A stretch of DNA of 64,000 nt, from NCBI RefSeq assembly GCF_032191835.1, contig NC_083237.1:21762001-21826000 (forward strand), read 5' to 3'. Below the pieces are notes generated by a model. It saw only the letters and a list, made by a program, of their open reading frames with translations. It was not told the origin of the DNA and made no database searches. The DNA comes from Heteronotia binoei (Eukaryota). Both the position numbers and the translations under genes were made by a program. This document shows positions 40,662 to 64,000 of this stretch, piece by piece; position 1 is the first letter of the stretch, and every line of letters begins with the position of its first letter.

Positions 40662-41153
40662 TAGGGTTGCCGAGTCCAATTCAAGAAATATCTGGGGATT
40701 TTGGGGGTGGAGCCAGGATGCATTGGGGTGGAGGCAGGAGAAACAAGATAAGCATAACTGAACTCCAAATAGAGTTCTGGCCATCACATTTAAAGGGACC
40801 ATGCTCCTTTTAAATGCCTTCCCTCCATTGGAAATAATGAAGGATGGGGCACCTTCTTTAGAGGCTGCTAGAATTGGACCCCCTATTCCAATCCTTTTGA
40901 AACTTGGAGGGTGTTTTGAGGAGAGGCACCGGATGCTGGGCTGAAAATTTGGTGCCTCTGCCTCAAAAAACAGCCCCCCCGGAACCTCAGTTACCCAAAG
41001 AGCAATTCCCTATTATATCCTATGGGAATCGGTCTCCATAGAGAATAATGGAGAGCCCTGTAGACATTTCCCTCCCCCCCCCTCTTTCGGATGACCCTGG
41101 AGGGGCTCAAAATCGGGGGATGCCCCGCCCCCAATTTGGGATTGGCAACCCTA
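40662..41153 (+). mobile_element. Full-length non-autonomous hAT element
   Basis: TIRs TAGGGTTGCC...TGGCAACCCTA; 8-bp TSD GTAGCCAT/GTAGCTAT. Confidence 0.85.
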
Positions 41154-44897: not shown

Positions 44898-47428
44898 TTA
44901 TCTCTCTTCAAGATCTTGAATAAGGAACTTGTTCTTGGCTTTCAAGGCCTCGTACAGCTGATCCTTGCAAGAGCGGTTCCAACTCCGCGTCAGCCTGTAC
45001 AGCTCCCGCATTTTGTCTTGGGTGGTCTCCCGCGAAATGATTCTTTCATACTGATCATCATCCAGGACGCTTCCATGAAGCAGATCCAGAACCGCCTCCA
45101 CGGTGGAAGTCCTCTGGATCAGCTTTTCCCGGTGCTTGTCAATGAAGTGTAACTCCATTGAGCGGGGGTCCCGTGGCCCTGTCAGAGAAAGAACGGAGAT
45201 TTAGGGAAATGGCTTATCAGTTATTTCTTCCTCTCCAGAGCCCTGAGAATCATAGCGTTGTGAGGGGAGGCTAGAGATTCATATGCAGAATTCTTCACAC
45301 CTCACTAAACTACTATTTTCAGGGCTTTTTGGAATGGGAAGGCCATGATGCTTAGAATAGTATGAAATTAATTTGTAATAGGGATAATGTGGCCCAAATG
45401 AATGTGGCAAGAAGGCGTGGGCAGAATGAGACTCAGTGGCTGGTGAACAGCCACACAGTCAGGCTCCTAAACATTAATTGGGGGTGGGGTTGACAGTATC
45501 TGAAGAGACTGGGAGGGCTTACCATAGATTCCTGATGCACCAGAGGAGGACTGCAAAGGCATCTGGACTGAGCCATTTTCACCTGCAAGCGGAAGAGGGA
45601 ACAAGTGAGCACACGTGTGAAACTATAGGAGTGATTCATACTCCAGAATCCTGTCAGAAACACGCTTGAATATTCTGTGTCGTGGCCCATTTAAGCGCAA
45701 TCCCAAATGTGTGAGTCAAATAATCTGCTTAGACAAGAAGAACAGGATAGGAAAAGGGGGCTTTGGAAAGTGCAAAGGACTTCCCAAACTTCAAATCTTT
45801 GGGAAAATTGAAGTTTTTAAAGTCAGGTTCTGTAATTGTTTTACCTTAGGCTCATGGCAATTTGTAGCCTATGATTCTTTGGTGGTTATAGTAAAATCAT
45901 ACTATTTAAGTCCATTTAAACAGCCCCTGGGAGAGGAAATAAGGCAGCAGGAAAGCTGGATGTTGGGAAGCAGCTGTTGGTAGAAAGGGCTCTCAATAAG
46001 TATGAAATAAACCAATTTACATAACGGAGCCTGAGCTGTTTTCTGCTTCTGCTGGAGAGTCCTGTGCCATCCAAAATCTTGACTATATCTCTAATCAACT
46101 ACAGTCAAGGCAAATGTGACAATCACCACAGCCATTTACTGTATTGGTGATTAATGGCTTTTGTGCCAAGCACTGTAGCGCTAAATTCTGGGACGCTTTT
46201 TCAAATAGAGCTCAACATCCTTTGTCGAGAACGCTCCAAGGTGCATATTTTGCACAGTCCTGGTACAGGGATTAACATTTATTCCAGGACCCCAATTAGG
46301 GTAGATCAAAATAGGGTGCCTTGTTAGTCTGTCTGTAGCGGCATAAAAGAGCAAAAGTCCAGTAGCACCTTTAAGACTAGCAACATTTGTGGCAGGGTTT
46401 GTGAGTCACTGCTCACTTCACAAGCAAACCCTGAACTCAGTGCTCTTCAAATAAGGAAATCCAAAGCCAATTTTTTTTAATTCCAAAAAAGTTTAGCCAA
46501 AATGTCTTTAATTGTCTTTCCTTTTAATGTATATTTCTGCAGGAGGCATTTGTGTTCAGTGGAATTATTCGCTCTCCCTTCCCCTCAGCTTCTGCTTTCT
46601 GATGCCCTTTTGCCCAGCCTCTCCCCTTCTAGTTTAAATTTCAAGACAAAGTTTAATCTGATTTCCAGGGGCAATTATTGCCTGACTGCTGGCCAGCACA
46701 ACCACCTGTTTTTTATGACACTCCTGCAGAGGGCAGCTGAATTGGGCAGAAGGGAAACCCTTCATTTCTAAAGGGGGGGGGGGGGAAGTATTGGGTGTTT
46801 AGTGGAAGGTTCAGGGACTGCCTTAAACCAGTGGGGCTACGGGTTTCCCCCCAGCAAATAGTTTTAGTTCACGGAGTTCGTTTACATTAGAAGAACCAGG
46901 CAGTTTCAGGAGATGAAGGGTCAGGCAGGAAACGACTAAACAGGAAAGTGAAAGTAGACCGAGCCATTTCCAGGAACAACCGCTGGGAGGAAAAGGCTTC
47001 TTTGCCCAGTTTTGCCAAGCCGTCCCAAAAGGTTCCTGTGCAGCACCTGCACCGCGTCAGGGAAGGACAGAGAACATTTCTCCCCCCGGCTCCCCCCTCC
47101 CCACCCAGAGGGGGCTGATCAGAGTCAAGCTGACGCCGCCCGTCTCCTTACCGATCCCGGTGACAGAGCGGAGCTTCTCGGCCTCTCGCTTGAGGTGGAT
47201 GCTCTCCAGCACCTGGGCGGCCACCTGCACGGCGTAAGGCTCGGTGTAGTAGCTGAGCAGCAGGTCGCTGAGGTCCAGCACGTCGGCCTTCTGCAGCCGC
47301 CCGCGGGGGATGTTGGCGAAACCCTCCTGCAGCGGGATCTCGTTCAGCTTCCCCTTGAACTTCTTCAGCTGCTCCTCCTCCAGGTCTTCCAGGGCGTCCA
47401 CCAGGTGGTCCCGCACCGTCTTCCCCAT
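44898..47428 (-). CDS. PYCARD: Inflammasome adaptor ASC, 205 aa; exons 47428-47152 (PYD), 45582-45523 (linker), 45178-44898 (CARD)
   Basis: [28 protein letters not shown]...; [18 protein letters not shown]...[14 protein letters not shown]. Three phase-1-joined GT-AG exons total 618 nt. Confidence 0.95.
46944..46976 (+). promoter_or_regulatory. Adjacent ISRE/IRF-E and GAS elements in PYCARD intron 1
   Basis: GAAAGTGAAAGT at 46944-46955 and TTCCAGGAA at 46968-46976. Confidence 0.55.
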
Positions 47429-47850
47429 CGCCGCGGCTCACCGCCCGCTGCAAACAGCGGCGCCACCACCAGCAATGCCTCTTCCTACGACAATGGAGCG
47501 GCGCCGAGAACACCCCCCACCACCAGGGAGGGAGGCTGCGGCGGCTCCGATTGGTGCTGCGGAAGAAGGGGGCGGAGTCAGAGCCCGGAGACCGTCTCGC
47601 TGTCTGCTGAACTCCAGCCCAGACTTGTCGGCTGGCGCTTTCCTTTCCTCTGCAGTTGGAACTTGCAGCGTTTAAGGGTCCGTGGCTGTTGCAAAGACCC
47701 CGAGAGAGAGGCGCTTCTTCGCCCCTAATTCGGACGATTCAGCTGGGGGGAGTGGGGTGGGTGGAGGGCTAGACTGCGGCCCCCTTGGGTGAGTTCAGCA
47801 GGGCTGCTCGGGGGTGGGTGGGGGCTCAGTACCTGATTGACGTGCAGAAG
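47050..47850. promoter_or_regulatory. PYCARD CpG island, possibly bidirectional
   Basis: CpG-rich over exon 1 and upstream; GC box GGGGCGGAG; strong + strand donor GG|GTGAGT at 47788/47789. Confidence 0.65.
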
Positions 47851-48562
47851 GTCCCGGGTTCAATCTCCGAAGTCACCAACGGGGAAACAAAAAAGATATT
47901 CATCTCTGAGTCTTGGAAAGCCGATGCTGCCAGCCGTCGGGTCTTGATAGATTGCAAAATTGCTTAAATGAAGATGTCGGGTTTAGTGGCGGTCGAGCCT
48001 CTGCTTGGCATGCAGAAGGCCCCAGGTCTCCCGTTTAAAGTGAAAGACCTCTGCTCGATACCCCGGTTCAGGAGTCTGAACTGTCTCCCGTTTAAAGTGA
48101 AAGACCTCTGCTCTGCACTGTCTCCCGTTTAAAGTGAAAGACCTCTGCTCGATACCCCGGAGAGCCCTCGGCGGGACACACAATAATTATACTGGCCTTG
48201 TGAGATCAATGGTCTCTGATTCACTAGTCGCGTTCTCAGGTTGCAGTAACCACGCGTAGGTGCAGCATCTGCATGTGCCTGTCTGTTTGTGCCCCCGTAA
48301 GAGTCAAGGCACGCTCAAATTTTGGGAGTGAAGAGGGGAGGGACTTCAAGTGGGGTATGATGCTGTAGTCTGCCATCCATTTTTTCTAGGTGAATTGATC
48401 TCTCTTACCTGGAGACCAATTATAATAGTGGGAATTCTCCAGCCACCACCTGGAGGAGAAAGGTCACTGAAACTTAGGACAACCTCTACCCAAAAGGCCA
48501 CTGTGACCCAAAATAACTACGAACACTGTGCCAATACAACTCGGCATTTTCCTACCCCGGAA

Positions 48563-51500
48563 GTCCTTTTACCCCATGACTCTCAAGCTTTCTAAGGAGC
48601 CTTTGATGAGGAACTTTATCAAAAGCTTTCTGGAAGTCAAGATAAACAACATCTATCGGGTCTCCTTTGTCCACATGTTTGTTCACCCCCTCAAAGAAAT
48701 GTAACAGGTTAGTGAGGCAAGATCTTCCCATACAGAACCCATGCTGAGTCTTCCTCAATAACCCATGTTCATCAGTGTGCCTACTCATTCTGTCCTTGAT
48801 AATGCTTTCTACCAACTTTCCCGGTATTGAAGTCAGACTGACTGGCCTGTAATTTCCCGGATCTCCTCTGGAACCCTTTTTAAAGATGGGGGTGACATTT
48901 GCTACCTTCCAGTCCTCAGGAACGGAGGCAGATTTCAATGAAAGATTACAGATTTTTGTCAGGAGATCCACAAGTTCAACTTTGAGTTCTTTCAGAACTC
49001 TCGGATGTATGCCATCCGAACCCGGTGACTTATTAGTTTTTAATTCGTCCATCAGTTGTAGGACCTCCTCTTTTGTCACCTCAATCTGACTCAGGTCTTT
49101 CAACACCCCTTCCAAAATTAGTGGTTCTGGGGCGGGCAAAAAGTTCTCATCTTCCACAGTGAAGACGGAGGCAAAAAATTCATTCAGCTTCTCAGCCATT
49201 TCCCTATCCTCCTTCAGTAATCCTTTTACCCCATGGTCATCCAAGGGCCCCACTGCTTCCCTGGCTGGTTTCCTACTTCTAATATATTTGAAGAAATTTT
49301 TATTGTTGGTCTTTATGTTTTTTGCAATATGCTCCTCATAGTCCCTTTTTGCCTACATGATCACAGTCTTGCATTTGATTTGCCACAGCCTGTGTTCCCT
49401 TTTATTAATCTCACTTGGACTGGTTTTCCACCGCTTAAAGGAGTCCTTCTTACCTTTTACAGCTTCCATTACTTTGTTTGTTAACCATGCAGGCCTTTTC
49501 TTATGCCTGTTTGTGCCTTTCCTAACTTGTGGTATGTATTTTATCTGAGCTTCTAGGATTATAGTTTTAAATAGTCTCCAAGCTTCCCCAAGGGTTTTGA
49601 CCGTATTTACCTTTCCTTTCAGTTTCCTCCTCACATGCCTCCTCATCTTAGAGAATTTACCCCTTTTAAAGTTAAACGTGGTTGTGGTGGTCTTTTTGGG
49701 CAACTCCCTATTTATACAAATGGTGAAATCAATAACATTATGGTCACTGCTCCCAAGTGGCGCAATCACTTTTACATCTCTCACCAAGTCTTGGGCATTA
49801 CTTAGGACCAAATCCAGGATCGCCCCACCCCTGGTAGGTTCTGAGACCATCTGCTCCATAGCACAGTCATTGAGAGCATCAAGAAACTCAATCTCTTTCT
49901 CTCGACCAGAACACATATTGACCCAATCAATCTGCGGTAGTTAAAATCACCTATTACGACACAGTTTTTATGTTTAGCCGCTATCTTTAAGCCTTCCATC
50001 ATATTATAATCATCCTCTCTCTTTTGATTTGGTGGGCGATAACAAACTCCCATAGTTAAATTTTTTTTGGGCCCTCTATTTCAACCCAAAGCATTTCTAG
50101 AAGGGAATCTAATTCTCTGACCTCAGTCTTACTGGACTGTATATCCTCTCTGACATACAGAGCCACCCCACCTCCAACCCTTCCCTCCCTATTCTTCCGA
50201 TATAACTTATATCCAGGAATCACCGTGTCCCACTGATTCTCCTCATTCCACCAAGTTTCTGAAATTCCCACAATGTCTATGTTTTCTCCCAACACTAAAC
50301 ATTCCAATTCACCAATTTTACTTCGAACACTTCTAGCATTTGCATACAAACATCTATAATTTCTCAGGCAAGCTAGGCCCACCACCTTCCTCCTGCCGCC
50401 TCGAGACTCTGGCAGACAGTCCATACTGTTTGTCACCATCACAGTGGACAACTCTGATCCGTTACCCGGTAGAAAAATAGCAGCCAACCCTTCATCTCTT
50501 TGAGATGAGTCCTCCCGAACCAGAGACATTTCATCTCTTGTCAGCTTTTCCCCAAGATTTAGTTTAAAAACTGCTCTGCCACCTTTTTGATTTTAAGCGC
50601 CAGCAGCCTGGTTCCATCCGGGGACAAGTGGAGACCGTCTCTTTTGTACAGCTCCCGCTTGTTCCAGAAAGCATCCCAGTGCCTAACAAACTTAAACCCT
50701 TCCTCCTTACACCATCATCTCATCCACACATTGAGACTTCTAATTTGTGCCTGTCTCTCCTGCCCTACACATGGAACAGGTAGCACTTCTGAGAGGGCTA
50801 CCTTGGAGGTCCTAGCTTTAAGTCTCCCACCTAGCAGCCTAAATTTTTCCTCCAGGACCTCACGACTGCATTTCCCCACATCGTTGGTGCCAACATGCAC
50901 CATGACCACAAGCTCCTCCCCAGCACTGTCTATCAGCCTATCTACTACACGCGTAATGTCTGCTACCTTCGCACCAGGCAGGCAAGTCACCATACGGTCA
51001 GTACGCGGTTTCGCCACCCAGCTGTCTACTTGCCTAAGGATCTAATCACCAACTACCAAACACCCCCCCTCTCCCCCTGCCCAGGGATGGTTCCTTGGCG
51101 CGAAAGGATTCCCGCTCATCAACCGAAGAAGAGGTCCCTTCTGAGGGCGCATTCCCCTTATCCTCAGCACGGTGCCCTGTTCCCTCTTGACCCTCACGCT
51201 CTCTGGCAGCAACGGGGCTGCTACGTTCAGAGCGGGGCTCATCTAATACACCCCCGAGAGTCTTCTCCAAGTTCCTAACTGACCGTCTCTGCTTCTCCAG
51301 AGCAGTCACCTCGGCCTCAAGGGTACGAACTCATTCCCTGAGGACCAGGAGCTCCTTGCATCGAGCACACACCCAAGACTTCTGTCCTTTGGGCAGACAG
51401 TCGTACATGTGACACTCAGTGCAAAACATGGGAAAGCCCCCACCCCCCTGCTGGCATTCTATCTTCATGATATATATATATTTTTAAAATATACAGTCCT

Positions 51501-51890
51501 CTTTAAATGCTGTTTGTTTAAGTGGCTCCCCTTCTGGAGGGTCAACTTACCTTACTGGGAGAACAAGGAAATTAGGGATCTGGGTTCCTGGTCCTTAGAG
51601 AGCCCCTAGGCGAAGAGCCACAGGCCAAGAGCCCTTTGGCAAGGCGCAGCTTAAAATGCAAAGAGGGTTGAGCAGAGCCACTCCTAAGCAATCAGCAGCA
51701 ATCACTCTCAATCACTTTTACTTTTAGCCCACTCAGCCAAACAAACAGCAGTTCCCCACTATCACAACTCAGAATTTTAAGCAGTCCCACAAACCTCAGA
51801 ATGAAGTCTTTCAAAACTCAGAAATTCTCAGCAACTTCTCCAGCTGTCTCTGCTTTCAGAGCTGCTCTGCTCTGTTCTGCTCTCTCTCAG
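48563..51890 (-). mobile_element. CR1 LINE: 5'UTR, ORF1 (Zn finger/coiled coil/SGNH esterase), ORF2 endonuclease and first part of RT; 3' half missing
   Basis: CTECHMY..CARCKEL, MVTCLPGAKV..VHVGTND, YANARS..ISETWW, KSPGSDGIHPRVLKEL, NYRPVSLTS, YLDFQKAFDKVPH. Several frameshifts and stops; homology ends at ESHGVKG. Confidence 0.92.
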
Positions 51891-51899
51891 ACCTCTGTG

Positions 51900-51959
51900 T
51901 AGGGTTGCCAAGTCCAATTCAAGAAATATCTGGGGACTTTGGGGATGGAGCCAGGAGAC
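51900..51959 (+). mobile_element. 5' fragment of a hAT MITE fused to a FIIND exon
   Basis: TAGGGTTGCCAAGTCCAATTCAAGAAATATCTGGGGACTTTGGGGATGGAGCCAGGAGAC, same family as the copies at 40662 and 63045. Confidence 0.85.
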
Positions 51960-53568
51960 AAGTTCTTCAGTGTGCATGCCGTGGTGATACTTTATCAGAT
52001 TTTGAAGAATATCACAACACTTAACCTCTACTTGGTTCCCAATGACTCTTCCCTGATACAGGTGAGAACCAACAAGATGGGATGCATGCCTCCCCCTGTT
52101 CAGTGCTGGTAGGTAGAATGCAGGGCTCAGGCAGGTGTCTATTAATGGATGACAATCTTGCTGAGTATTATAAATAAAACAGAATCCATTCAAAAAGTAC
52201 ATGGAAGTAAAACTGCTTCTTGGTGCTGGAACTACAATGATGGTCTCAGAAGAAAGGCTGCCAAAAGAGCTCCTGCATGCTCTTTCCACACCTTCTGGGG
52301 CTCACTTTGCAATTCATCCGGAACTAATCATTAGAACTGAGACTGCAGCACACCTGCCTGGGATCACAGAAATGATTCATTCCACAGTCTTAAGAGCCTT
52401 CTACACATTTAAAGGGAGGGAGGGTGCTCCAACTCTGTTGGGAAGAGCTAGAAAGCTCTGGTAGCTGATCTCTCTAGCTGGCCTACACAAGAACATTTCC
52501 CATGTGTGTCTGCACAGAAGAGCATTCAATGACCAACAGTTAAGTGCGACCAGGTTTTCCCTCTAAATAGGCAATCCAGGATGCCGAAGAGAAGTTCCAC
52601 TCAGTGCTGGTGCGAAAGCCCCCTCAAACAATAATGCCCTTGCGCTACGGTTCTCGCTATACCGTATCCAGTTCAGTAGACCTCAAGATAATCCCAAAGG
52701 TAGGTGCATCGTCTTCAAAAATACTTGGGCACCATTGCAATGAAATATGTTTGCAACTCTCCTATTTTGATTGTTCTAATGGTATTCCATGACTTACACA
52801 GAATTGAGAGAGAAGCTGGGGGCTTGGGGGAAGTGAGACTGCTGGTTGACTCTTAATTAATAACATGACATTTTGGGGCATTTATTTTGTGCTCACACAG
52901 TTTAAATGAAGGTATAGTGTCCAGCATTATGAAAATCTCAGTTCAGGGGTTTTTTGTTTTTGTTTTTTTAAATCAAAGGCAGATTTTCAGGCTCAAAGCT
53001 CCGATGTTAGCCTTGAAAGTTGTTGACAGTCTCCAGTGAAATTTCTGGGAGATTCTCAAAAGCAGTTCAAGTGACCTGCTCAGTGGCATGACAAGGGGAC
53101 CAGTCTTTGTTTTGGAAAGCTGCTACGCTTTTAAAGATTATCATTAAGATGTAACTTATCTAAATAAAATACACAAGTTGTGGAGGGACATCAGCCAAAA
53201 TAAAAAGTAGTCCCTACTCCGGGGAGGATAATCCAGATTCCAGTGGTAGGGGAGGGAGGGAGGGGAGAAGCAGGGATAACAAGGGATGGGTGTGAATTTA
53301 TGCAGTTCTATCCTGTTAGCCCCCAAACTCCCCAAGTACTAAGAGTAACTTCTTGATGAACAGTTGGCTGAATTGTTCTTTTATGCTCTTTGTTTCTCCC
53401 TAACTTGATGTCCTCCAATTCTGTATCAGGAACTGCACTTTACTTACAAGAACCCTCGGCAGCAGCAATCCTATGTGCAATTCAGTATCAGAAGCACTGA
53501 GATAGTGGATATAAGTCTGAAAAATAAGGAAGATCTTTGCTCTGTCTGGGACACTTCACTCGAACCAG
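51945..53568 (+). CDS. NLRP1/CARD8-like FIIND UPA subdomain; exons 51945-52061, 52571-52699, 53430-53568
   Basis: The spliced translation MEPGDKFFSVHAVVILYQILKNITTLNLYLVPNDSSLIQ|AIQDAEEKFHSVLVRKPPQTIMPLRYGSRYTVSSSVDLKIIPK|ELHFTYKNP...VWDTSLEP(G) is colinear with the recalled human NLRP1 UPA (FIPVTSVVLLY..HLYLIPSD..AIDDLEMKF..KPP..RYTVS..ILPKELELCY..VWEALVKPG). Splice sites are canonical, phases 0/0/1, no stops. Confidence 0.82.
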
Positions 53569-54442
53569 GTACATCTTGCTGGATTGTGGATTTTTATGGG
53601 GAGGTTAAGACACCCTTGCAGAAAAGTTCACAGATATTACTGTTTCACAAGCATATTGATATAGAGATGTGAGAGATTTGTTGAACTGAATCTCTTGAGT
53701 AGAAGAGTGTGTTGGAAGAGCTCCACTGAACTGTGAGTACTGAACTGTCTTGCTCTCCCAGCTTCCCCAACCTTTGGAGGGTTTATCTTTTCCTTTTTTG
53801 GTAATCCACTGACAGCCCCTGACCTTTGCAGGAATTCCCATTGAGAAGACTGAGGTTCCCAACTTCCCTGTGTTGCTGTTTGAAGGCCTTGCCTAGCGAG
53901 TGCATCTCCTGCAATCCAGCATCTGGTTACTGCAGGGACACCTTACTGCACTTGTGCTCCACTGGGGGATTAGCACCTCGCCATGTGACTGCCTCCTCCT
54001 CTCCTGGTGCCCATTCAAATAATAATGTGTTCAAGTGGTGGAGGTCTGTGTAGCACAGAGGCAGTTACTCACATTAAAAGCTTTAAAATAGTTATTAGAA
54101 AGAAAATGTCCATGTACAGATTCTTAGCACAACAACAGGCTGAGCAATGATACAGAAAAAATATGTAAAACCTGCCATTTCTCTGTCACTCTCTACATGC
54201 TGACCTTATTCTAAGGCAGGCTGCTTAATTTAGAAAGTTAACCATTAAAGCTTCCCATTCCCGTGCGGGTTTTGTTCAGGTCTGCAACCCTCCTGCACTT
54301 TTTTTTTCATTCCACGGCACAATAAAAAAAAAATCCAACTTGAGGCGCACTGGCCAAAAAAATTGGGAATAACCAGCCTTGCAGATGCCCAGTTCGATGT
54401 GTTTGCCGTATGAAAAATACCTGCAAGCAACATACACCTTCC

Positions 54443-57400
54443 TTTTTCTTTTTCTTTTTTTTACTTTCAAACAAATCCTTTATTAACAATTCCATATACA
54501 ATAAAGCAATAACAAACAAACAAACTATACATAGATCATACATACCATACTCAAACCACCACCCACCCTTCCACCCAAGGAGCTTAAGGGGCTTTACCAT
54601 AGCACAAATCTGGTTTTCTCATAATAAATCCCATGCTTTTTATCCATATATATAAATAGTCCTAGGTCTTCCTACAATCTTGTAGATTACCTCCTCTTCG
54701 TCTTACAGTTAATGTGTCCATCTCAGCTGCCTCCAATAATTTCTGTATAAATTCGTCTCTATCCGGTAATTTAGAGACCTTCCAATATTTCGCATAGAGA
54801 ATTCTCGCAACAGTTATTATATGCAATAATATTTTTTTTTCTTGTCTGGATACACTTCCTTTACATACATTTAGCAAGTATAGTTCGGGAGTATGTTGAA
54901 GCCTTATTTTTAATATTTTTTGTGTCCAAAGGTTAATTTGGGCCCAATATTTTTTGGCATATTCACGTTGCCACCAAATATGGTAGAGGGACCCCTTTAC
55001 TTTCCTACATTTTCAACATTTGTTGGAGTACTTAGGGTAGATTTTACTCAGCCTTTCCAGGGTTAAATACCATCGATACATCATCTTGTAAATATTTTCT
55101 TTGAACACTGCTGATTTAGTGAATTTTAAATTTTGATTCCAAATTTTTTCCCATTCCTCCATCTCAACACTATACCCAAAATCCTTCAACCATTTTACCC
55201 AGCTTTCTTTAACTTCACTCTGCATTTTAATTTGTAGGAGCCAATTATAGATTTTCGAAATTAGTTTCTGATTATCGCAAATTATCATATCGAATTCATT
55301 TGGTTTTTTAACAAATCTTACTTCCTTGTCTAGTTGGAACTTAGATTTAACTTGGTTCTTCAGCCACCAATCCAATTTCACATTATCCTCCAGTTTTAAG
55401 TTGTTTTCTTTGTCTAATAAAACTCTATAATTGTAATTGTTTTCCCAACAGTATAAATTGGGTTGGCAAGAGGCTTCTACTGGGGATAGCCAGAGAGGTA
55501 TATTAGGATAGATCATATTTTTAACTTCATTCCAAACTTTGTACAGCGATTTTCTTACTTCATGTCTAAAAAAAATATTATTCCTTGTAGGGGGCAAATA
55601 CCACAAATAGGAATGCCAGCCTCTAACTAGACCTATACCTTCCAATACCAATAACCTTTTATTTTCCAGTGCAAACCAATCTGTTAGCCATACTAAACAA
55701 CATGCCTTATAGTCAGGCAAGGCGAGCCCTCCTCTAGATTTACTGTCTTGTAGTACCTTCAATTTGATTCTGGGTTTTTTGTTTTGCCATATAAATATGG
55801 TTGTCAAGTTATTCAACTGATGAAAGAATGTTTGGGATAGTATGATTGGTATCGTCTGAAATAAGTACAAGATTCTTGGTAGAATATTCATCTTGATGGA
55901 TGCGATTCTTCCCAATAAGGAAATTTGTAAGTCTCTCCATTTATTTAAGTCTAATTGAATTTCTGTTAAGATCTTGTCATAACTATCTTTTTGTAATGTT
56001 TTTAAATCATTTGAGAAGTAAATGCCTAAATATTTGATCTTCTTTTCGTGGCTGAACCCAGATTTCGTTTCTAATTGAGCAATTTCCTCCTTAGTCATAT
56101 TTTGGGTCAGGAATTTAGTTTTCTGGAGATTAACTTTAAAGCCAGATATTCCTCCGTATTCTTCCAGTCTTTCCATCAGATATTCTATCGAAGAAATGGG
56201 GTCTTCTAATATTAATAGCAGGTCGTCAGCATAGGCTCGGACTTTATATTTCCCCCCCTTAATCTTGGTACCTTTAATTCCGTCATCGTCCCTTATTTTT
56301 GTTATTAAGAGTTCTAATGTTAAGATGAAGAGCAAGGGAGATAATGGACAGCCTTGTCTGGTCCCCCGTTCAATTCTTATCGCTTCAGTAAAGTGCCCAT
56401 TAATATTTATCTTTGCACTTTGTTTGGTATAAATGGCTCTCACTAATTTAATAAAAGTCGGCCCACATCCAATAGCCTCCAGTGTTTTAAAAATAAGATT
56501 CCAATTGACGTTATCGAACGCCTTTTAAGCATCGAGGGCAATACCTGCAAACTGCTTCTCAGGGTGTATCCGATAATACTCTAGAATATTCATAAAGAAT
56601 CTTATATTCTGCCTTATAGCTCTCCCGGGAACAAACACCATTTGGTCTTCATCAATGACTGTGGATATAGCCTTTTTAAGTCTGTTAGACAAGATTGCCG
56701 CAAATATCTTATAATCTGCATTTAAAAGCGAGATTGGCCTGTAGTTGCAAATTTCTGTAGGGTCTGTCTCTTTCTTGTGAATCAGCGATATCGAAGCCTC
56801 ACTCCAAGATGGGGGGAACTTAGCTGTTTCTTGTATTTCCTCTATTACGCATTTATAGGGGATCAACAATATCTCTTCAAACGTTTTAAAGAACTCGATA
56901 GGTAGTCCATCAGGACCTGGAGATTTGTTGCTTTTCTGTTTTTTCAGTGCCTCTGTTATTTCATGCATGGTGATGGCACTCTCTAATCCGTCCCACTGCT
57001 CTTTTGTTATTTGCTTGATCCCAACATTCTTGATATACTCCTCCTAGGTTGTTGTGCAATCTCTTGTTTCTTATAGAGATTCTGATAGTAATTTTGTACA
57101 ATTATATTCATTTGAGATTTTTCTGAGATTTCTTCTTTTTTTTTCATTCTTAAGTGATCTTATAGCTTTTCTCCCTTTCTTTTCTTAGTTTATAAGCTAG
57201 CCACCTACTGGTCTTGTTAGCGCTTTCAAAATAATTTTGTTTGGTCCACTTCAGCTTCTTCTCTAATTCTTCAACCAATAATAGATTTATTTCATGCTGT
57301 AGTGCGTAAATCTTGGCTGTTACTTCTTTGGAGTTTTTATCTTTTTGTTGTTTTTTCAATTTCTTTAATTCCGTTATTAAGTCATTATATGCTTTCATTC

Positions 57401-58600
57401 ATTCTTTTTTCCTTTTTGTAGTGTAGCTAATTGCAATCCCTCTAAAAAAAGCCTTGAAGGCATCCCAAATTACTTGCATCGGGGTGTCCTTTTTCAGATT
57501 GCATTCAAAAAACATCTCTATATCTTTCTTTGCCTTCTCGATAAACGCTTCTTTTAAAATTTGCAAATTTAGCGTCCAACGTGTTTTGCGTAGGATATCT
57601 TTCAAAATAATCTGGATTGGGTTATGATCAGCGTATGTTTTAGGATTGATATCTGTTTGGATAACCGACCACCCTAGGGAGGCCGACATCCAGCACATGT
57701 CTAACCGGGACCAACATTTGTGTACATGTGAAAAGTATGTAAAATCCCTTGTTTGTGGGTTTTTCATCCTCCAGGCGTCAACTAAATTAAACTCATCTGC
57801 CATTTTAAAAAATGTCTTTGGCAGTTGGCTCCGGATCTTTTTTGCCTTGGCTTTCTCGTATTTTTTTTCTTTCCCTATATCAAATACAGCGTTGTAGTCA
57901 CCCACAATACAGAAATTCTCCAAACTATAATTCAGCAACTTTTCATGTAGTCTGGCATAAAATTGCTCTTGGTTGTTATTTGGTGCATATATGTTGCCCA
58001 AAATTATTTTATTTCCGTTTATCTCAATTTCTATTACTAAGGTTCTACCTATCTCATCCTTATATAGCAATTTAGATTTTATGTGTTCCTTAACGTAAAA
58101 AGCAACGCCTCTTTTTTTCTTCAAATCACATGAGTAGTAGAGCTATCCTAACTTTTTGTTTTGTAGATATTTTGTATCTCCTTCTTTTATGTGGGTCTCT
58201 TGTAAACAAATTATTTGGGCCCCAGTCTTCTGAAGTTGCAAAAATGTCTTTTTCCTCTTTTTTTGGTTCATTTAGTCCGTTTGTATTAACAGAAAAAATC
58301 TGTAATCCCGCTTTGGTCATCATCTTGTTGTTAAGTTACTATCCAGTATCTTTCTTTGTCCTTTTTGTACTTGTGATCTTGTCTTAATTCTTTCTCTTTT
58401 CTTTTCCTGTAAATCTTTTTTTCCCGGGCTGTTATAATAGGGTTCTTCTCCTTGATCTTCTCCAGAATCGGGTTCTTGACTGTGCATTTCTACATACTTT
58501 TGCCAGAATTCTTCCAACTTTTCTATTGATGTTATATTATGCCTCCTAGTCTGGTAAATGAAGAAGATTCCTTGGACTGTGCAACTGAATAACAACAAAG
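54443..58600 (-). mobile_element. Decayed L1 LINE: ORF1 C-terminus, ORF2 (APE, RT, CCHC), 3'UTR and A-tail
   Basis: SVNTNGLN, GNIYAPN, SRLD, KSPGPDG, NYRPISLLN, GTRQGCPLSPLLF, AYADDL, IKYLG. AATAAA at 54479-54484 (minus) and A-tail at 54443-54462. Multiple frameshifts; 5' boundary approximate. Confidence 0.92.
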
Positions 58601-58764
58601 CTTAAAGAAACCCCTCCCTCTCAGTGTGAACACAAATATCACTCTCTCTGAGGGAGCAGTGTCCCCTTCTCTCAGCTCCTTCTTTGCAGCCTCTTGGATA
58701 GGAAGCTCCTAGGTGATGGTGGTTGTTCAGTTTTTTTAATATCTCCACGGGTTCCACTTCTTAG

Positions 58765-58806
58765 GGAATTTTTCCTCCGGCTCTGCTATGGCCCATGTTT
58801 TCTGTA
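58765..58806 (+). CDS. Candidate 42-nt phase 1-1 linker exon of the UPA gene
   Basis: CTTCTTAG acceptor and A|GTAAGA donor; open (GNFSSGSAMAHVFC). It lies 313 nt before the CARD exon, similar to ASC intron 2 (344 nt). Confidence 0.4.
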
Positions 58807-59119
58807 GTAAGAAATGAAAAGAAGGTACATGGGCTTTTAAAGCAACAAATTATGCGAATATCAATAAACCTGCAAAAGCCTTGCTTTTGGGAAACTCTGG
58901 TTTACACAATTTGTTTTGCTTAGATACAACTTTAACTGTCATGACTTCCTTTAATAAATCCTCGGAATTGGTAGGGTGTTCAGTTGGTAAAAAAAAAAAT
59001 CTGTTGGAAATCTCTAGACTCCTCTCAGTTTCTGTGCTCGATCAAGACATGACTGGAAAAGCCATTTAAGCCAACTGTGATGTGGCGTGTCCCTTAGACC
59101 CCAGTTGTTTCTCTGACAG

Positions 59120-59250
59120 GGACTCAGGCGTCCCTCTCACTGGAGCCTCATTTCATTTAGCAGCACCTGGTGCAGCTGATCCTGAGGACAGCCACAGTGG
59201 ATGGAATTTTGGCTCTGCTGTATGGAGTTGTTCCAGATGAAAAGCAATAT
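59120..59250 (+). pseudogene. Disabled, truncated CARD exon similar to ASC exon 3
   Basis: Acceptor tttctctgacag|GG is identical to that of PYCARD exon 3. (G)TQASLSLEPHFI*QHLVQLILRTATVDGILALLYGVVPDEKQY is ungapped against ASC at 21/44 identical positions; TAG at 59158-59160. Confidence 0.82.
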
Positions 59251-59911
59251 CTCTTTGTTGCACTTCTGAATCACTGTGGTGTGCTGTTTAAAATGTCCGT
59301 ATCGCTTTCTACAATGCCACTCACCCACCCTTCATTGTGCAATCTTCCTTGGACTTTAAAAAAAATGTTCTTCTAAGGTGAGCGCTATAGCACAAAACTG
59401 TCATAGCACTTCAGTGCTCACCTCAAGAGTCTTTTTTAAAATCCAAGGAATATTATGTGGTGGAAAAGGACAGGGGGGAAATGGCACTGTTTGAAATGAC
59501 CATTGCTCTTCAGAGATGGCTCACTGATGGAAAGGAATTTGCTGGATGAAACCCTCATCCCAGTATCGCTTTACTCAAAACCAGGTCAATTACATCTGGT
59601 TTAGAATGCTAATGCATAAAGGGCCAAAGTGGAATACAGCGCAATAAAATATCTAATTTGATCCATATTACCAGCCACAATGTTAGAGAGCTAGTGGGTG
59701 GTGGTGCTCTGCTGCTTGTATTTTCCAAAGCTGTTTCTGGAGCACCTAAAATAAACTGCAAGATGACCCCCTCACTGCTCCTCAGAATCCCAAACAGCAA
59801 GCAGAAGACCTCAACCACAGGGTGGGAGTAAATGAACTGGGACTTCATCCAGAATGACCCCTCATCTATGGCTCTGCCCATCACATTTTCAACCACCTGC
59901 TTCTCTCCTAG

Positions 59912-60007
59912 GGGACCTGGACCAGAACTTTGAAGCGCTTTCTGTAGGAAATCTGAGTGACAGTAATTCTCAAGCTGAAGGGACTCCTGTATCTTCTGAT
60001 GCAGAAG
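59912..60007 (+). CDS. Candidate symmetric exon (GDLDQNFEALSVGNLSDSNSQAEGTPVSSDAEG), gene unassigned
   Basis: ttctctcctag acceptor and AAG|GTAATC donor; 96 nt, phase 1-1, open. Confidence 0.45.
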
Positions 60008-60064
60008 GTAATCAAATAGTGAACATAACTCCAGAAAGAAAAAGGCAGTATGCTCATCAACCAC

Positions 60065-61043
60065 CAGGGCCTTTTTTGTAGCAGGAACTCCTTTGCATAT
60101 TAGGCCACACACCCTTGATGTAGCCAATCATAGAATCATAGAGTTGGACGGGACCTCCAGGGTCATCTAGTCCAACCTCCTGCAATAAATCCTCCAAGAG
60201 CTTACAGGGCTCTTCTTACAGGGCCTACTGTAAGCTCTCAAAGCAGGGGTGGGGAATGTCCAGCCCACGGGCCATTTATAGCCCACAAGATCACTTGGTC
60301 TGGCCCGCAGGGGATAGTGGGGCCGAACTGCATAGTGGCCTCCTCAGGGCCAGCTGGCCGGCAGGGATCACTGGGTGAAACTGTGCAGCAACCTCCCTGG
60401 GGCCCAGCTTGCCAGTTGGGATCACTGCAGGGCCTAGAAGAGTCACAGACGCAGTTCAGATAAGTCCCCCCCCCCATTTCTTTCTTCCCCATTCTCTCTC
60501 TCTGTGGTGCCTGAGTGGTGGGCATTGTGAAGTTGGTGCCTTTAAAGGTCTTGTGGGAGCAGCTGCAGTTTCTTGCATGGAGGAGGGAGGGGTGGAAGCA
60601 CGCTACTACCAGTTCAACTTGCACCTGATTATCCTAGATGGTGTGGCCTAATACACTAACGAGTATGTGACCTAATGTGCTAATGAGTTAATATGCTAAT
60701 ATTAGGGGGTATGTTCTAATATGCTAATGAGTTCCTGCTGGGCTTTTTCTACAAAAAAAGCCCTGACCTTAGACACTTGCCAAGGGCAGTGGGCTGGGGG
60801 CGGGGTGCCAAGTTAGGCTCCCCCCATGTGACTTTAAATAATTTTGCCGGCCTGAATTGTTCTATCTTGGTGGAGCACTGTTTTTTAAGTTGATCATTTT
60901 GTATGGCCCGTGAATGATGTTATAAATATTCAAATGGCCCTTGGCAGAAGTAAGGTTCCCCACCCCTGTTTTAGAGGATTGGCTACATCAGGAGAGTGTG
61001 GCCTAATAAGCAAAGGAGTCCCTGCTACAAAAAAAAAGCCCTG
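60065..61043. mobile_element. Palindromic hAT MITE carrying nested insertions
   Basis: Outer ends CAGGGC..GCCCTG with TSD TCAACCAC/TCAACCTC. Contains a CR1-tail fragment (~60128-60188) and a second hAT element at 60244-60968 (TIR CAGGGGTGGGGAA), which itself carries a MITE end at ~60640-60767. Confidence 0.75.
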
Positions 61044-61915
61044 TCAACCTCAACACTCCATCATGTTCCAGACCATTCGGGAAGCCTGCCCTTTTGTGTT
61101 CCAGAACATTAGATGCTTATGATTCTTAGGCGAAGGTCAGGTGGCATGCTTATCACGTTGTGGGTGCACCTCTAATTTTATCCACGTTTATTTGTTCTGT
61201 AGAGATTCTGTCAGACGTCCCACTCTTCACCTGCTTCACCATTCACTCACCCTGTGGGTGACCATCCAGACCATTGCTGCGTGGTAACCACAGTGCTGTG
61301 TTTCTTTTAAAATTATCACACACGCATGCGCATAAACATTTAAGGTGCTGTTCCACCCCAACAAACGAGAGAGGGGTTTTTTTGGAGGGAGGTTTCCACT
61401 TACGGACAACTGCCCTGGGGGCTCCCAATCCTGAAAGATGGCTGGAGTATTGAAGCGCATCAGCAGTGATGCCGTAGCTTGGGGGTAAGCGACCACTTAT
61501 GTGCACATCACTAACTTGCCTTTTAAAAATGGAGCCAAAGCAGAAAGCTTGACTTTGCATGAAAGCGATCTGGAAATGTGTGATGAGCTGGCAAGATCTG
61601 TAAAGATCAGACTTTATTCGGTGTCAGGAAAGTCAGGGTTGAGAAGGCAGGGCTGATAACTGGTACAGGATACCAATGATGCTGTCTGAACAAGCAATTT
61701 AAATATGGGAGAAGCAATGACACCAGATCAAAAAGCCTGTCTGACCCCAACCTTAATCTGATTGCATCTAATGCCGTCATGTTATTTACATATATGACCT
61801 CCTAAGGAAATAACAGAACAGATTATGTAACTGATCATAGGAGAAAACTAGATGAGCTGGGAGAAGTTTTTTTTTTTTTTAAGAGGACAGACTCTCTTCC
61901 CCTCTCCCCTCTCAG

Positions 61916-61942
61916 GTTATTGCAGCAAGAAGACAAAGGCAG
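61916..61942 (+). CDS. Candidate 27-nt symmetric micro-exon (GYCSKKTKAG)
   Basis: Strong polypyrimidine tract + CTCAG acceptor and CAG|GTTGTA donor; phase 1-1. Confidence 0.3.
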
Positions 61943-62935
61943 GTTGTACATCAAGACTGCATGCAACACTTAAAGCAGTGGGAAAAATTAAGTTTATAAA
62001 GCAGTTTGAGGAAATACTTGAAGGGTGAAGGATGGTGGCAATAAGGAATTTTACAAACAGTGAAGGAGTTATGAGTGGATTAAGAGCTATGATTGGGCGG
62101 CTCACAGTTTACAATGAAACAGCAATAAAAATGGAGTTAAACATTACGTTAAAAGCCATTAAGCTAAAAACAATTCAGGTGCTAATTTCAATACAATTTA
62201 AAGATAGCAAGATGAAACGAGCATTTTAAAGAAAGGAGGAGGGACATCATATGAAAAGGTCAGGGTTTAGGCTTGGAACTAAAACTAAAAGGTGAGGGTT
62301 GGAACTAAAACTCCTGGATGAACCCAGAGCCTCTATGTTGTGACTCTAGGGGGTCCGTTACAACCCATTTTTACAAGCCACGTCAGGCAGCAACAGCAGG
62401 AGATTGTTGAGCCCCTGTTGTTCTGCCATACATGGTTGTTGGGTTGGTTGCATTCACCTGGAAAGGCTGTGCAGGTAAGATCCCATAAACTGGAGACAGG
62501 GGCAAGTGAAAAGACACCTGGTTTTCAGCTGTTCCTAATTCATTTGAACTACCAAGCCAGTAAACTAGGGTTGCTGTCAGCGCAGGGTTCATCGAGGCTT
62601 CAACAATGATAGGACTCTTTTCTTTTGAAAATAAGTTTCATTTATTGAATACACAATGTTACTCATGCAGAAGGTCTTTGAAAGTGATAACATACATAGG
62701 GCAAGCACTAGCCTTTATGGGGGTACATCAAAGCCAGGGGGCTTTAAATCATTCTCATAACAAAGTTGCTTTCTACTTTCTGAGGTGTTTGATTCACACG
62801 CCTGCTATCTTTCTAGCTGGGCCATTTCCACTCCCCCTCTCAGCCGATGTCCTTGTGGCGCCTGGAAAGCGGCGGCGGTGCCTCTCCCTTGCCCTCTGGC
62901 CGTTTATTGCCTTTGGCGCCCAATTCCCTCCTGCC

Positions 62936-62945
62936 TTTCACTTCC
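62936..62945 (-). promoter_or_regulatory. ETS-IRF composite element (GGAAGTGAAA) in a small CpG-containing patch
   Basis: TTTCACTTCC on the + strand, within GC-rich 62830-62950. Confidence 0.35.
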
Positions 62946-63044
62946 CCCTCAGGCATACCTAAGATTCTACTATAGATCACTGGGGTTAGTCCTAAGCAAA
63001 TAAATACTATAGGCAATATAGTTAGTATCAACAGAACACAAGCT

Positions 63045-63531
63045 GACAGTTGCCAAGTCCAATTTAAGAAATATCTGGGGACTTTGGGGGTGGAGCCAAG
63101 ATCAAGGCTATAACAAGCATAATTGAACTCCAAACGGAGTTCTGGCCATCACATTTAAAGGGACGGCACACCTTTTCAATGCCTTCCTTCAATAGGAAAT
63201 AATGAAGGATAGGGGCGCCTTCTTTTGGGGCTCATAGAATTGGATCCCCTGGTCCAATCTTTTTGAAACTTGGGGGGGTATTTTGGGGAGAGGCACTAGA
63301 TGCTATACTGAAAATGTGGTGCCTCTACCTAAAAAAACAGCTTCCCCAGAGCCCCAGATACCCACGGATCAATTCTCCATTATTTTCTATGGGAATAAAT
63401 CTCCCTAGGGAATAAAAGAGTCCCCAGCAGACATTTCCCTCCCCTCCCCCCGCTTTCTGATAACCCTGAAGCGGGGGGAGGGCCTCCAAACCGGGGGATC
63501 CCCTGCTCCCACCTGGGGATTGGCAACCCTA
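63045..63531 (+). mobile_element. Non-autonomous hAT element (same family as 40662)
   Basis: Body colinear with 40662-41153; 3' TIR TGGCAACCCTA; 5' TIR degenerate. Confidence 0.8.
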
Positions 63532-63717
63532 CAGTAAACAGAAGGGAAATGTAACAGAGCATATACCTTTGCCAAGCAAATCCTCGTAATTATTCAAGTG
63601 TGTACCTAGTAAGAAGACTTGCAGCTTTCATTTGTCTTTCTTTGTGGTAAAAGTACCTCTGTCTCCAGCTGCTAAATTTGGATTATGACTGATCTTTCCT
63701 TTGTCATTTATATACAG

Positions 63718-63789
63718 GTCCAAGCAGTCAGGAGGTGAACAGCAATAACAACAGAACGTCATGGTTATTTTCCTGGTTATTTAAATTCT
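63718..63789 (+). CDS. Candidate symmetric exon (GPSSQEVNSNNNRTSWLFSWLFKF), gene continues beyond the window
   Basis: ctttcctttgtcatttatatacag acceptor and T|GTGAGT donor; 72 nt, phase 1-1, open. Confidence 0.45.
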
Positions 63790-64000
63790 GTGAGTTTGGA
63801 ATGACTGTAAAAGATTTGCCCCTCCCTGTAATATCAGGCGAAGGGCTTTTCCCACATTCTCAATTTACTCTTAAGTTTCTGTTTCTTTGGGAGAGGGCGG
63901 TCCTTGTTCCACACGTTTTGTTCCCTGTAGTGGTCAATTCAATATTAAGCAGGTTTATTTCCAGTTTATCTTCCTGCAGTTTAAATCAACAGAGAGATAA

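What the first reader, a model, noticed from the sequence alone, without database searches (positions are those of the whole stretch)
51900..51965. A transposon point mutation supplies the start codon exactly where the autoproteolysis site was lost
Seen: a 60-bp MITE 5' fragment is fused directly to the middle of the FIIND exon. Three other copies in this window (~31660-31730, 40662, 63045) read GGGGGTGGAG; this one reads GGGGATGGAG. That creates an ATG (51945) in strong Kozak context (G-3, G+4), in frame with UPA and after an in-frame TAG at 51900. By alignment to recalled human NLRP1, MEPGD replaces only ~14 residues beginning at the cleavage Ser. Inference: TE exaptation genetically encodes what is normally a proteolytic fragment.
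Basis: partly seen in the sequence, partly recalled or inferred. Interest (0 to 1): 0.75.

Follow-up and report, generated by a model that had tools for sequence, protein, structure and literature searches.

The report
Truncated gecko inflammasome gene, transposon-derived ATG
In Bynoe's gecko a CARD8/NLRP1-like immune gene next to ASC has lost everything upstream of its UPA domain through a deletion that ends inside a small transposon. A single G-to-A change in that transposon remnant gives the only possible in-frame start codon, but nothing yet shows that a protein is made from it.

Summary
The window is Heteronotia binoei chromosome CM063339.1.

- **Repeat remnant:** 51900-51962 is the first ~62 nt of a ~490-bp inverted-repeat transposon (MITE).
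- **Broken exon:** the intact Gekko kuhli relative has a 254-nt ZU5/UPA exon. Homology to it starts at 51958, at a 5-bp microhomology (ACAAG).
- **What was lost:** the ZU5 part, the F|S self-cleavage site and the 12-residue beta0 strand. MEPGD stands in their place.
- **The ATG:** the remnant differs from the four-copy consensus of the window's copies only by the G>A that makes ATG 51945. It has G at -3 and +4 and lies in frame after TAG 51900.

- The decayed "CARD exon" at 59120 is an old intronic relic also present in Gekko.
- An intact CARD exon lies about 1.26 kb beyond the window end.
- The frame stays open through five exons (253 codons).

One RNA contig joins exon A to exon B. No RNA covers the ATG, the 5' end is unknown, RefSeq calls no protein gene here, and the clean remnant suggests a recent truncation. 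So intact exons and low dN/dS do not prove selection since the event.

My odds: transcribed young relic about 0.45; genuine UPA-CARD protein starting at this ATG about 0.3.

The parts
51900..51962 (+). 5' remnant (about 62 nt) of a ~490-bp MITE with terminal inverted repeats; TA plus GGGTTGCCAAG...GGAGACAAG
   Evidence: blastn and alignment to copies at 40662, 63045 and 31731(-). Inverted repeats in the full copy. Other copies continue ...GGAGAC AAGGGTGTGACAAGCATAAT (loose ends).
51900..51902 (+). In-frame TAG that closes the frame upstream. It is made of the TA at the transposon end plus the first G of the inverted repeat.
   Evidence: Sequence. It lies 45 nt (15 codons) before the ATG.
51945..51947 (+). 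Candidate start codon. The A at 51945 is G in all other copies seen. G at -3 and G at +4.
51958..51962 (+). Breakpoint: ACAAG is shared by the MITE interior (GGAGACAAGG) and the ancestral exon (TACAACAAGTTC). This 5-bp microhomology marks the deletion junction.
   Evidence: Homology to G. kuhli L001 and L008 starts at 51958. Exon sequence; MITE continuation.
51945..52061 (+). Exon A: MEPGD plus 34 UPA codons; GT donor at 52062. Only the last 104 nt (51958-52061) are ancestral exon.
   Evidence: Pfam UPA-FIIND profile positions 1-31, E 3.9e-4. Aligns to residues 15-47 of a human and 17-47 of a rat NLRP1 C-terminal fragment chain in the PDB. 84-89% nt identity to G. kuhli.
51969..51970 (+). Heteronotia-specific AG (TTCTTCCGT became TTCTTCAGT, R to S). 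A possible but weak alternative splice acceptor that would bypass the ATG.
   Evidence: The sequence upstream is purine-rich. No RNA evidence either way.
52571..52699 (+). Exon B (43 codons) of UPA
   Evidence: Pfam UPA-FIIND positions 33-74, E 3e-5. 91% amino-acid identity to G. kuhli P0001. An RNA contig joins 52061 to 52571 across a GT..AG intron.
53430..53568 (+). Exon C (46 codons plus 1 nt, leaves in phase 1), end of UPA
   Evidence: 86% amino-acid identity to P0001 residues 244-293. 87-89% nt identity, ungapped. AG and GT splice sites present.
59120..59250 (+). Decayed CARD-like pseudo-exon with an in-frame TAG at 59158-59160, followed by a repeat at 59249-59580. It lies in what is an intron in the Gekko genes.
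   Evidence: The same relic is in G. kuhli at L001 22334-22438 and L008 24796-24900. The repeat is seen.
59912..60007 (+). Linker exon E (96 nt, phase 1 in and out)
   Evidence: 71% amino-acid identity to P0001 residues 325-359. 89% nt identity over the block that holds the exon, 59858-60064. AG and GT splice sites present.
48552..51899 (-). CR1-type LINE with broken ORFs. Its 5' side abuts the MITE remnant, and it fills most of the 4.5 kb between ASC and exon A.
   Evidence: Reverse-transcriptase and endonuclease ORFs. High multi-copy contig depth. Copies in G. kuhli and elsewhere in Heteronotia.
44898..47428 (-). ASC/PYCARD, head-to-head neighbour (PYD exon 47150-47428, CARD exon 44898-45158)
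   Evidence: Pfam PYRIN E 4e-24 and CARD E 7e-16. The PYD exon (query residues 1-92) is 100% identical to RefSeq ASC of Heteronotia binoei.

Best explanation
This is a real and probably recent 5' truncation of the ASC-proximal member of a gecko CARD8-like (CARD repeats, FIIND, CARD) gene cluster.

How it arose (inferred). A deletion joined the interior of a MITE (position ~62) to the interior of the ZU5/UPA exon at a 5-bp microhomology (ACAAG). It removed the N-terminal CARD exons, ZU5, the F|S self-cleavage site and the beta0 strand.

What is left (shown). The UPA exons A-C, a linker exon and an intact CARD exon about 1.26 kb beyond the window keep canonical splice sites and one open frame of 253 codons. 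The locus is still transcribed and correctly spliced, at least from exon A to exon B.

How I read the ATG. It was created by the only substitution seen in the MITE remnant. I take it most likely to be a coincidence in a young, not yet decayed gene relic, or at most a nascent gene. No stable, selected protein has been demonstrated.

Shown: anatomy, breakpoint, intact frame, one splice junction.
Inferred: the deletion mechanism, its recency, and the absence of a selected product.

The confidence figure refers to the 'relic, not a selected protein' reading. The structural part alone I hold at about 0.9.
For: - **Breakpoint:** mid-exon break and microhomology.
- **Nothing upstream survives:** no ZU5, NACHT or N-terminal CARD hit anywhere in the window.
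- **Recency:** the MITE remnant shows 1 difference in about 62 nt from the window's copies, whereas synonymous divergence between Heteronotia and Gekko is about 0.3. The low dN/dS (UPA 0.23-0.27; CARD on the Heteronotia lineage 5 synonymous to 3 nonsynonymous) can therefore be inherited from the time before truncation.
- **Annotation:** RefSeq calls no protein gene over 47429-57428. It assigns the CARD exon to a 'p53-like' model with its own first exon at window 62432.
- **RNA:** a single depth-3 contig, with no coverage of 51963-52028.
- **Lineage-specific:** G. kuhli, Paroedura picta and Eublepharis macularius show no UPA exons within the 10 kb fetched upstream of ASC.
- **Biological cost:** direct expression of UPA-CARD kills inflammasome-competent cells (bioRxiv 10.1101/2020.08.14.246132), so a constitutive gene of this kind would be costly.
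Against: - The only change in the remnant is one of just 5 in 180 that would make an in-frame ATG (P about 0.025), and it sits in a good Kozak context.
- All five exons, their splice sites and the frame are intact.
- Very few Heteronotia-specific amino-acid changes are seen.
- Exon A is still recognised by the splicing machinery.
- The cut falls exactly between the two Pfam domains and leaves a complete UPA core plus CARD.
Confidence: 0.45

Rival explanations
1. This is a genuine new protein-coding gene. Translation starts at the MITE-derived ATG 51945 and yields a ~253-aa UPA(minus beta0)-CARD protein. That is a germline-encoded version of the fragment that NLRP1 and CARD8 normally release only after self-cleavage and degradation of the N-terminal part. 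It lacks beta0, so it can neither be held by a ZU5 domain nor insert into the DPP9 tunnel. Its activity would be set by transcription, or by UPA-UPA capture by full-length paralogues. It would seed ASC/caspase-1 assembly, or act as a dominant modulator of the paralogues.
For: - ATG created by the sole substitution in the remnant, P about 0.025 by chance, with G at -3 and +4.
- It is the only in-frame ATG that would give a whole UPA.
- Complete Pfam UPA-FIIND coverage from profile position 1.
- Intact CARD, E 1.1e-14.
- Phases 0, 0, 1, 1, 1 are compatible across the exons.
- Exon A to B is spliced in RNA.
- Exons are 84-91% identical to Gekko against 75-78% for introns.
- beta0 (S1213-N1224) is exactly the element that tethers UPA to ZU5 and enters the DPP9 tunnel, and Met-initiated UPA-CARD is active (paper).
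Against: - No evidence of translation, and no RNA over the ATG.
- No gene model in RefSeq.
- If the transcript starts upstream of 51801, an in-frame upstream ORF precedes the ATG.
- The pseudo-CARD at 59120 has the same acceptor context and would end the frame after UPA.
- A constitutively free UPA-CARD is expected to be toxic.
- The constraint signals may predate a recent truncation.
Confidence: 0.3
2. The UPA exons are parts of a different, longer transcript rather than of a gene that starts at 51945. One version has an upstream exon spliced into the Heteronotia-specific AG at 51970, or into AG 51922-51923 inside the remnant. Another has exons A to CARD reading on through the donor that overlaps the CARD stop codon (AG|GTGAAG) into the downstream p53-like/CARD exons, as in RefSeq model P0049.
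For: - RefSeq P0049 splices the CARD exon in the same frame to p53-like exons.
- The C>A at 51969 creates TTCTTCAG|T, which is absent in G. kuhli.
- Tandem arrays often give read-through transcripts.
- The 5' end of the RNA is unknown.
Against: - The acceptor at 51970 has a purine-rich upstream tract.
- The RefSeq model uses its own first exon at window 62432 and does not include the UPA exons.
- No joint into 51970 or 51924 was reported, although contig coverage there is nil.
Confidence: 0.15
3. The MITE-exon junction or the A at 51945 is an assembly or consensus error, or a private allele of the sequenced animal.
For: The junction and the A are seen only in one assembly (GCA_032191835.1). 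No independent read evidence could be laid over 51945-52028. Only one public run was served.
Against: - This is a chromosome-level assembly.
- The junction is clean and sits at a microhomology.
- The flanks are colinear with two G. kuhli paralogues right up to the break.
- The RNA contig matches exons A and B with 1 mismatch in 132 nt.
Confidence: 0.07

Closest known systems
CARD8 / NLRP1 C-terminal fragment (UPA-CARD) released after FIIND autoproteolysis
   Same: Same domains in the same order: UPA (Pfam PF23679) followed by a linker and a CARD. The closest intact relatives (G. kuhli P0001, P0046, P0048; Eublepharis P0003) have ZU5, the F|S site, UPA and CARD. The predicted product starts within 12 residues of where the natural fragment starts.
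   Different: It would be encoded directly, not produced by self-cleavage and proteasomal removal of the N-terminal part. It lacks beta0 (human S1213-N1224), the strand that sits in ZU5 and enters the DPP9 tunnel, and has MEPGD instead. No ZU5, catalytic H/E/S or N-terminal sensor region is left at the locus. No protein has been demonstrated.
Transposon-supplied alternative starts or first exons that give N-terminally truncated proteins (for example LTR-driven truncated receptor kinases; transposon-initiated transcripts)
   Same: Transposon sequence sits at the new 5' end of a truncated ORF and contributes the first codons.
   Different: Here a 62-nt MITE remnant contributes the ATG through a later point mutation, after a genomic deletion. 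No transposon promoter or transcript start has been shown.
Partial or unitary pseudogenes in tandem immune-gene arrays (truncated NLR/CARD copies)
   Same: Lineage-specific 5' truncation in a fast-evolving tandem cluster, flanked by LINE and MITE insertions, with a further dead CARD exon in an intron and no annotated protein model.
   Different: All retained exons are intact, correctly spliced in RNA, and provided with an in-frame ATG in good context.

Membership tests
FIIND-containing inflammasome sensors (CARD8/NLRP1-like) | ZU5 subdomain (Pfam PF13553 'FIIND') | tested here: not met
   tblastn with five FIIND proteins finds nothing N-terminal of P0001 residue 170 anywhere in the window. In P0001 the PF13553 match covers residues 42-167, all of which lie upstream of the break.
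FIIND-containing inflammasome sensors (CARD8/NLRP1-like) | Autoproteolysis site (F|S) with a catalytic Ser at the start of UPA | tested here: not met
   The G. kuhli exon encodes PRF|SLLGLLIKPLYN. This stretch is deleted in the window, where homology begins at 51958.
FIIND-containing inflammasome sensors (CARD8/NLRP1-like) | UPA subdomain (Pfam PF23679) | tested here: met
   Exon A matches profile positions 1-31 (E 3.9e-4) and exon B positions 33-74 (E 3e-5). Each exon alone is below the 27-bit gathering score. Exons B and C show 91% and 86% amino-acid identity to G. kuhli P0001, whose UPA scores 80.7 bits.
FIIND-containing inflammasome sensors (CARD8/NLRP1-like) | C-terminal CARD on the same polypeptide | tested here: inconclusive
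   An intact CARD exon lies at L006 12833-13113, equivalent to window 65,264-65,544 and so outside the window. Pfam CARD E 1.1e-14. The phase is compatible. No RNA shows it joined to the UPA exons, and RefSeq joins it to another model.
MITE (non-autonomous DNA transposon with terminal inverted repeats) | Terminal inverted repeats, small size, no ORF, many copies | tested here: met
   The copy at 40662-41153 has 25-nt arms that are 80% complementary. The element is about 490 bp. There are 4 copies or fragments in 64 kb, very high multi-copy contig depth over 51800-51999, and a related copy in G. kuhli. A TA target duplication is suggested but not established.
Exapted transposon-derived start codon | Translation initiates at the transposon-derived ATG and the product is under selection | not testable with these tools
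   Only Logan contigs of one run were available. There is no coverage of 51963-52028, no Ribo-seq and no population data.

The most novel reading that the evidence does not exclude
Bynoe's gecko carries a germline-encoded, 'pre-released' inflammasome seed. This would be a UPA-CARD protein that needs no self-cleavage and lacks the beta0 strand, so neither a ZU5 domain nor the DPP9 tunnel can restrain it. It would start at a codon born from a point mutation in a MITE remnant and would sit 4.5 kb head-to-head with ASC. Control of this otherwise lethal fragment would have shifted from proteolysis to transcription, or to capture by full-length paralogues.
Probability: 0.22. Interest if true: 0.8.

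Novelty: new variant of a known kind. Interest (0 to 1): 0.5.

Why it matters
NLRP1 and CARD8 are thought to work only through 'functional degradation': self-cleavage in the FIIND, destruction of the N-terminal part, then release of UPA-CARD, which DPP9 helps to hold back.

A natural gene that encodes the released fragment directly, and without the strand that both restraints use, would be a natural experiment. It would bear on how much of the control is needed, and on whether such a fragment can be tamed by transcription or by paralogues.

It would also be a clean case of gene birth in three traceable steps: a microhomology-mediated deletion, a transposon remnant, and one point mutation.

If it is only a young relic, it is still a well-dated snapshot of how tandem immune-gene arrays shed members. 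It also serves as a warning that intact exons and low dN/dS do not show function after a recent break.

Tried and rejected

2. **'Pseudo-CARD is an inverted duplicate of ASC exon 3': not supported.** The similarity to ASC, including the acceptor tract, is shared by all CARD exons of this gene family. For example, L001 25638-25888 matches the ASC CARD at 76%.

3. **A possible relic of the same unit next to G. kuhli ASC (L003 2530-2932, similar to 59249-59580): rejected.** It turned out to be a dispersed repeat inserted elsewhere.

4. **Insertion in Heteronotia versus deletion of an ancestral first unit: left open.** The G. kuhli ASC-proximal region matches Heteronotia 69-75 kb, but the units are paralogous repeats. 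A deletion of the 5' part is the simpler reading.

5. **P0002 (3022 aa) from the representative search:** a low-complexity repeat protein, discarded.

6. **Linker exon D of G. kuhli (L001 20606-20701):** not found between 53600 and 59100. Its absence keeps the frame.

7. **More MITE copies to census the G>A:** none in the extra 40 kb of L006, and one (with G) in G. kuhli.

8. **Sequencing runs:** only one run was served, and as contigs only. The site 51945 is too near the end of the matching part to be listed.

9. **Third word-index protein search, for transcript-derived ORF fragments: not run.** It is costly, and Heteronotia ASC has no Logan-derived member, so the expected yield was low.

10. 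**Look-up of Eublepharis P0003 DNA:** failed.

Full report
**What is at the coordinates.** The stretch 51900-51962 reads TAGGGTTGCCAAGTCCAATTCAAGAAATATCTGGGGACTTTGGGGATGGAGCCAGGAGACAAG. It runs straight into TTCTTCAGTGTGCATGCC..., which continues to a GT donor at 52062. The first part is the 5' end of a ~490-bp non-autonomous element.
- Full copies lie at 40662-41153 and 63045-63531, and a 5' fragment lies at 31731-31648 on the minus strand.
- The copy at 40662 has 25-nt terminal inverted repeats.
- All other copies in the window read GGGGGTGGAG (31657-, 31679-, 40699, 63082), as does a distant subfamily copy at 23222. Only this locus has GGGGATGGAG. One Gekko copy also has G.
- The ATG at 51945 has G at -3 and at +4. 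It is in frame with TAG 51900-51902 and with the downstream coding frame.

Against the four-copy consensus, the G>A is the only difference in the remnant. Only 5 of the 180 possible single substitutions in the 60 in-frame nucleotides would create an in-frame ATG, which gives P = 2.2-2.8%.

**Which genome.** The ASC PYD exon is 100% identical to RefSeq ASC of Heteronotia binoei. The fetched locus L002 is 100% identical to window 34898-57428. The window is CM063339.1 21,762,001-21,826,000 of GCA_032191835.1.

**What the exon is.**
- Exon A (51945-52061) and exon B (52571-52699) hit Pfam UPA-FIIND at profile positions 1-31 and 33-74.
- Exon A aligns to residues 15-47 of a human NLRP1 C-terminal fragment chain (6x6a_G) and to residues 17-47 of a rat one (7crv_D) in the PDB.
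- A HMMER search with exon B found gecko FIIND-CARD proteins: Gekko kuhli P0001 (91% identity), Eublepharis P0003 (81%) and others.
- P0001 reads ...ENPRF|SLLGLLIKPLYNKFFRVHAVVVLYQ...
- Its genomic exon is L001 13824-14077 (254 nt).
- Homology between the window and two G. kuhli paralogues (L001, L008) begins exactly at 51958.

The five bases ACAAG (51958-51962) are shared by the MITE interior (other copies continue GGAGAC-AAGG...) and by the ancestral exon (TACAACAAGTTC). The junction is therefore a 5-bp microhomology, the usual mark of an end-joining deletion.

The loss comprises 150 nt of the exon and everything upstream. No ZU5, NACHT or N-terminal CARD match exists anywhere in the window. 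In Pfam terms, all of 'FIIND' (ZU5 plus beta0; P0001 residues 42-167) is gone and all of 'UPA-FIIND' (residues 175-290) is kept. MEPGD replaces SLLGLLIKPLYN. These 12 residues correspond to human beta0 (S1213-N1224). That strand completes the ZU5 fold in the resting protein and threads into the DPP9 substrate tunnel in the sequestered free fragment (bioRxiv 10.1101/2020.08.14.246132).

**The rest of the gene.** From 51958 the window is colinear with the G. kuhli genes to its end. Introns are 75-78% identical and exons 84-91%.
- Exon C is 53430-53568 and leaves in phase 1.
It is followed by a repeat (59249-59580).
- That exon has counterparts inside the corresponding intron of the Gekko genes (L001 22334-22438, L008 24796-24900). 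It is an old relic, not the gene's CARD.
- A linker exon (59912-60007, phase 1 in and out) follows.
- Locus L006 overlaps window 52432-64000 exactly. It shows an intact CARD exon at L006 12833-13113, equivalent to window 65,264-65,544, with its own TGA. Pfam CARD scores E 1.1e-14.
- All phases fit. The frame from ATG 51945 would run 39+43+46+1+31+1+92 = 253 codons.

**Expression.** Only one public run was served, and only as contigs. One 171-nt contig (depth 3, one mismatch) joins 52061 to 52571 across a GT..AG intron and runs 8 nt past exon B. The exons are therefore in spliced RNA. No contig covers 51963-52028, so neither the ATG nor the transcript start is documented.

If transcription starts upstream of 51801, an in-frame 33-codon upstream ORF precedes the ATG and ends at TAG 51900.

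RefSeq calls no protein gene between ASC and 57428. Its 'p53-like' model P0049 has a first exon at window 62432. It takes the CARD exon and, through a donor overlapping the CARD stop codon, joins it to p53-DBD and CARD exons downstream.

**Selection or recency.**
- Pairwise dN/dS between Heteronotia and Gekko is 0.23-0.27 for UPA and 0.37-0.49 for CARD, with dS about 0.3.
- Polarised by Eublepharis, the Heteronotia lineage shows 5 synonymous and 3 nonsynonymous changes in the CARD.
- That is purifying selection, but it is averaged over the whole lineage.
- The MITE remnant has 1 change in about 62 nt. The MITE insertion, and therefore the deletion that cut it, are probably recent compared with the roughly 0.15 per-lineage divergence.
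- The constraint signal and the intact frame are therefore what one expects from a gene that was whole until recently. They do not show function since the break.
- The truncated unit is absent from the 10 kb fetched upstream of ASC in G. kuhli, Paroedura picta and Eublepharis macularius.

**Reading.** The structural story is secure: a deletion at a microhomology between a MITE and the ZU5/UPA exon. The functional story is open.

In favour of a real UPA(minus beta0)-CARD protein:
- the improbable position of the only substitution in the remnant;
- the good start-codon context;
- a cut that falls exactly on the domain boundary;
- the intact CARD exon;
- correct splicing of exon A to exon B.

Against it:
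- no evidence of translation and no RNA over the ATG;
- no annotation of a protein gene;
- competing acceptors (the pseudo-CARD at 59120, and the Heteronotia-specific AG at 51970);
- the expected toxicity of a free UPA-CARD;
- the apparent recency of the break.

My odds are about 0.45 for a transcribed young relic, 0.3 for a genuine gene starting at 51945, 0.15 for the exons serving another transcript, and 0.07 for an artefact or a private allele.

**Comparison with what is known.** CARD8- and NLRP1-like proteins occur in most vertebrate clades, including lizards (PMC11258412). I know of no natural gene that encodes the released fragment directly; this rests on my own knowledge, and the two literature searches here were not aimed at that question. 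By the membership test the locus is not a FIIND sensor, because ZU5 and the cleavage site were tested and are absent. If translated, it would work like the sensor's active fragment.

Noticed in passing
L006 17627-41327 (window-equivalent about 70-94 kb); G. kuhli L008 1-3981: In both geckos the FIIND-CARD units alternate with exons that encode a p53 DNA-binding domain followed by CARDs. Heteronotia RefSeq 'p53-like' P0049 has CARD, P53 (Pfam E 3e-25), CARD, CARD. A G. kuhli model has P53 plus CARD. Either there is a p53-DBD-CARD gene family in the ASC-linked cluster, or the p53-like domain is the N-terminal part of the multi-CARD-FIIND-CARD genes.
   Followed up: partly
window 59120-59580: The decayed CARD pseudo-exon shares its acceptor tract (TTTCTCTGACAG|GG) with the true CARD exon and with ASC exon 3. 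It is cut short by a dispersed repeat (59249-59580) that also occurs about 7 kb upstream of ASC in G. kuhli. The pseudo-exon is conserved in position in two Gekko paralogues, so it is older than the split of the two genera.
   Followed up: partly
G. kuhli CM122952.1 43.61-43.97 Mb (L003, L008, L001, L007): At least three FIIND-CARD paralogues (K2H54_036357, _036395, _036495) lie on the same side of ASC. The synonymous distance between the closest pair is only 0.06, against about 0.3 to Heteronotia. This points to recent duplication or gene conversion inside Gekko.
   Followed up: partly
window 31648-31731 (-): A second 5'-only fragment of the same MITE, with a 22-bp tandem duplication of TTTGGGGGTGGAGCCAGGAGAC, abuts a GC-rich, promoter-like region (30.6-31.6 kb). 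I did not test whether it is this family.
   Followed up: no
window 55013-58124 (-): An L1-like LINE with long open ORFs (476, 241 and 147 aa) is inserted in the intron between exon C and the pseudo-CARD. The region where Gekko has linker exon D shows no match in Heteronotia.
   Followed up: partly
L004 (Eublepharis CM053288.1): In the leopard gecko the FIIND gene (1177 aa: CARDs, FIIND, CARD) ends 9 kb upstream of ASC on the same strand. In Heteronotia and Gekko the FIIND genes are divergent from ASC. An inversion therefore separates the two gecko families.
   Followed up: no
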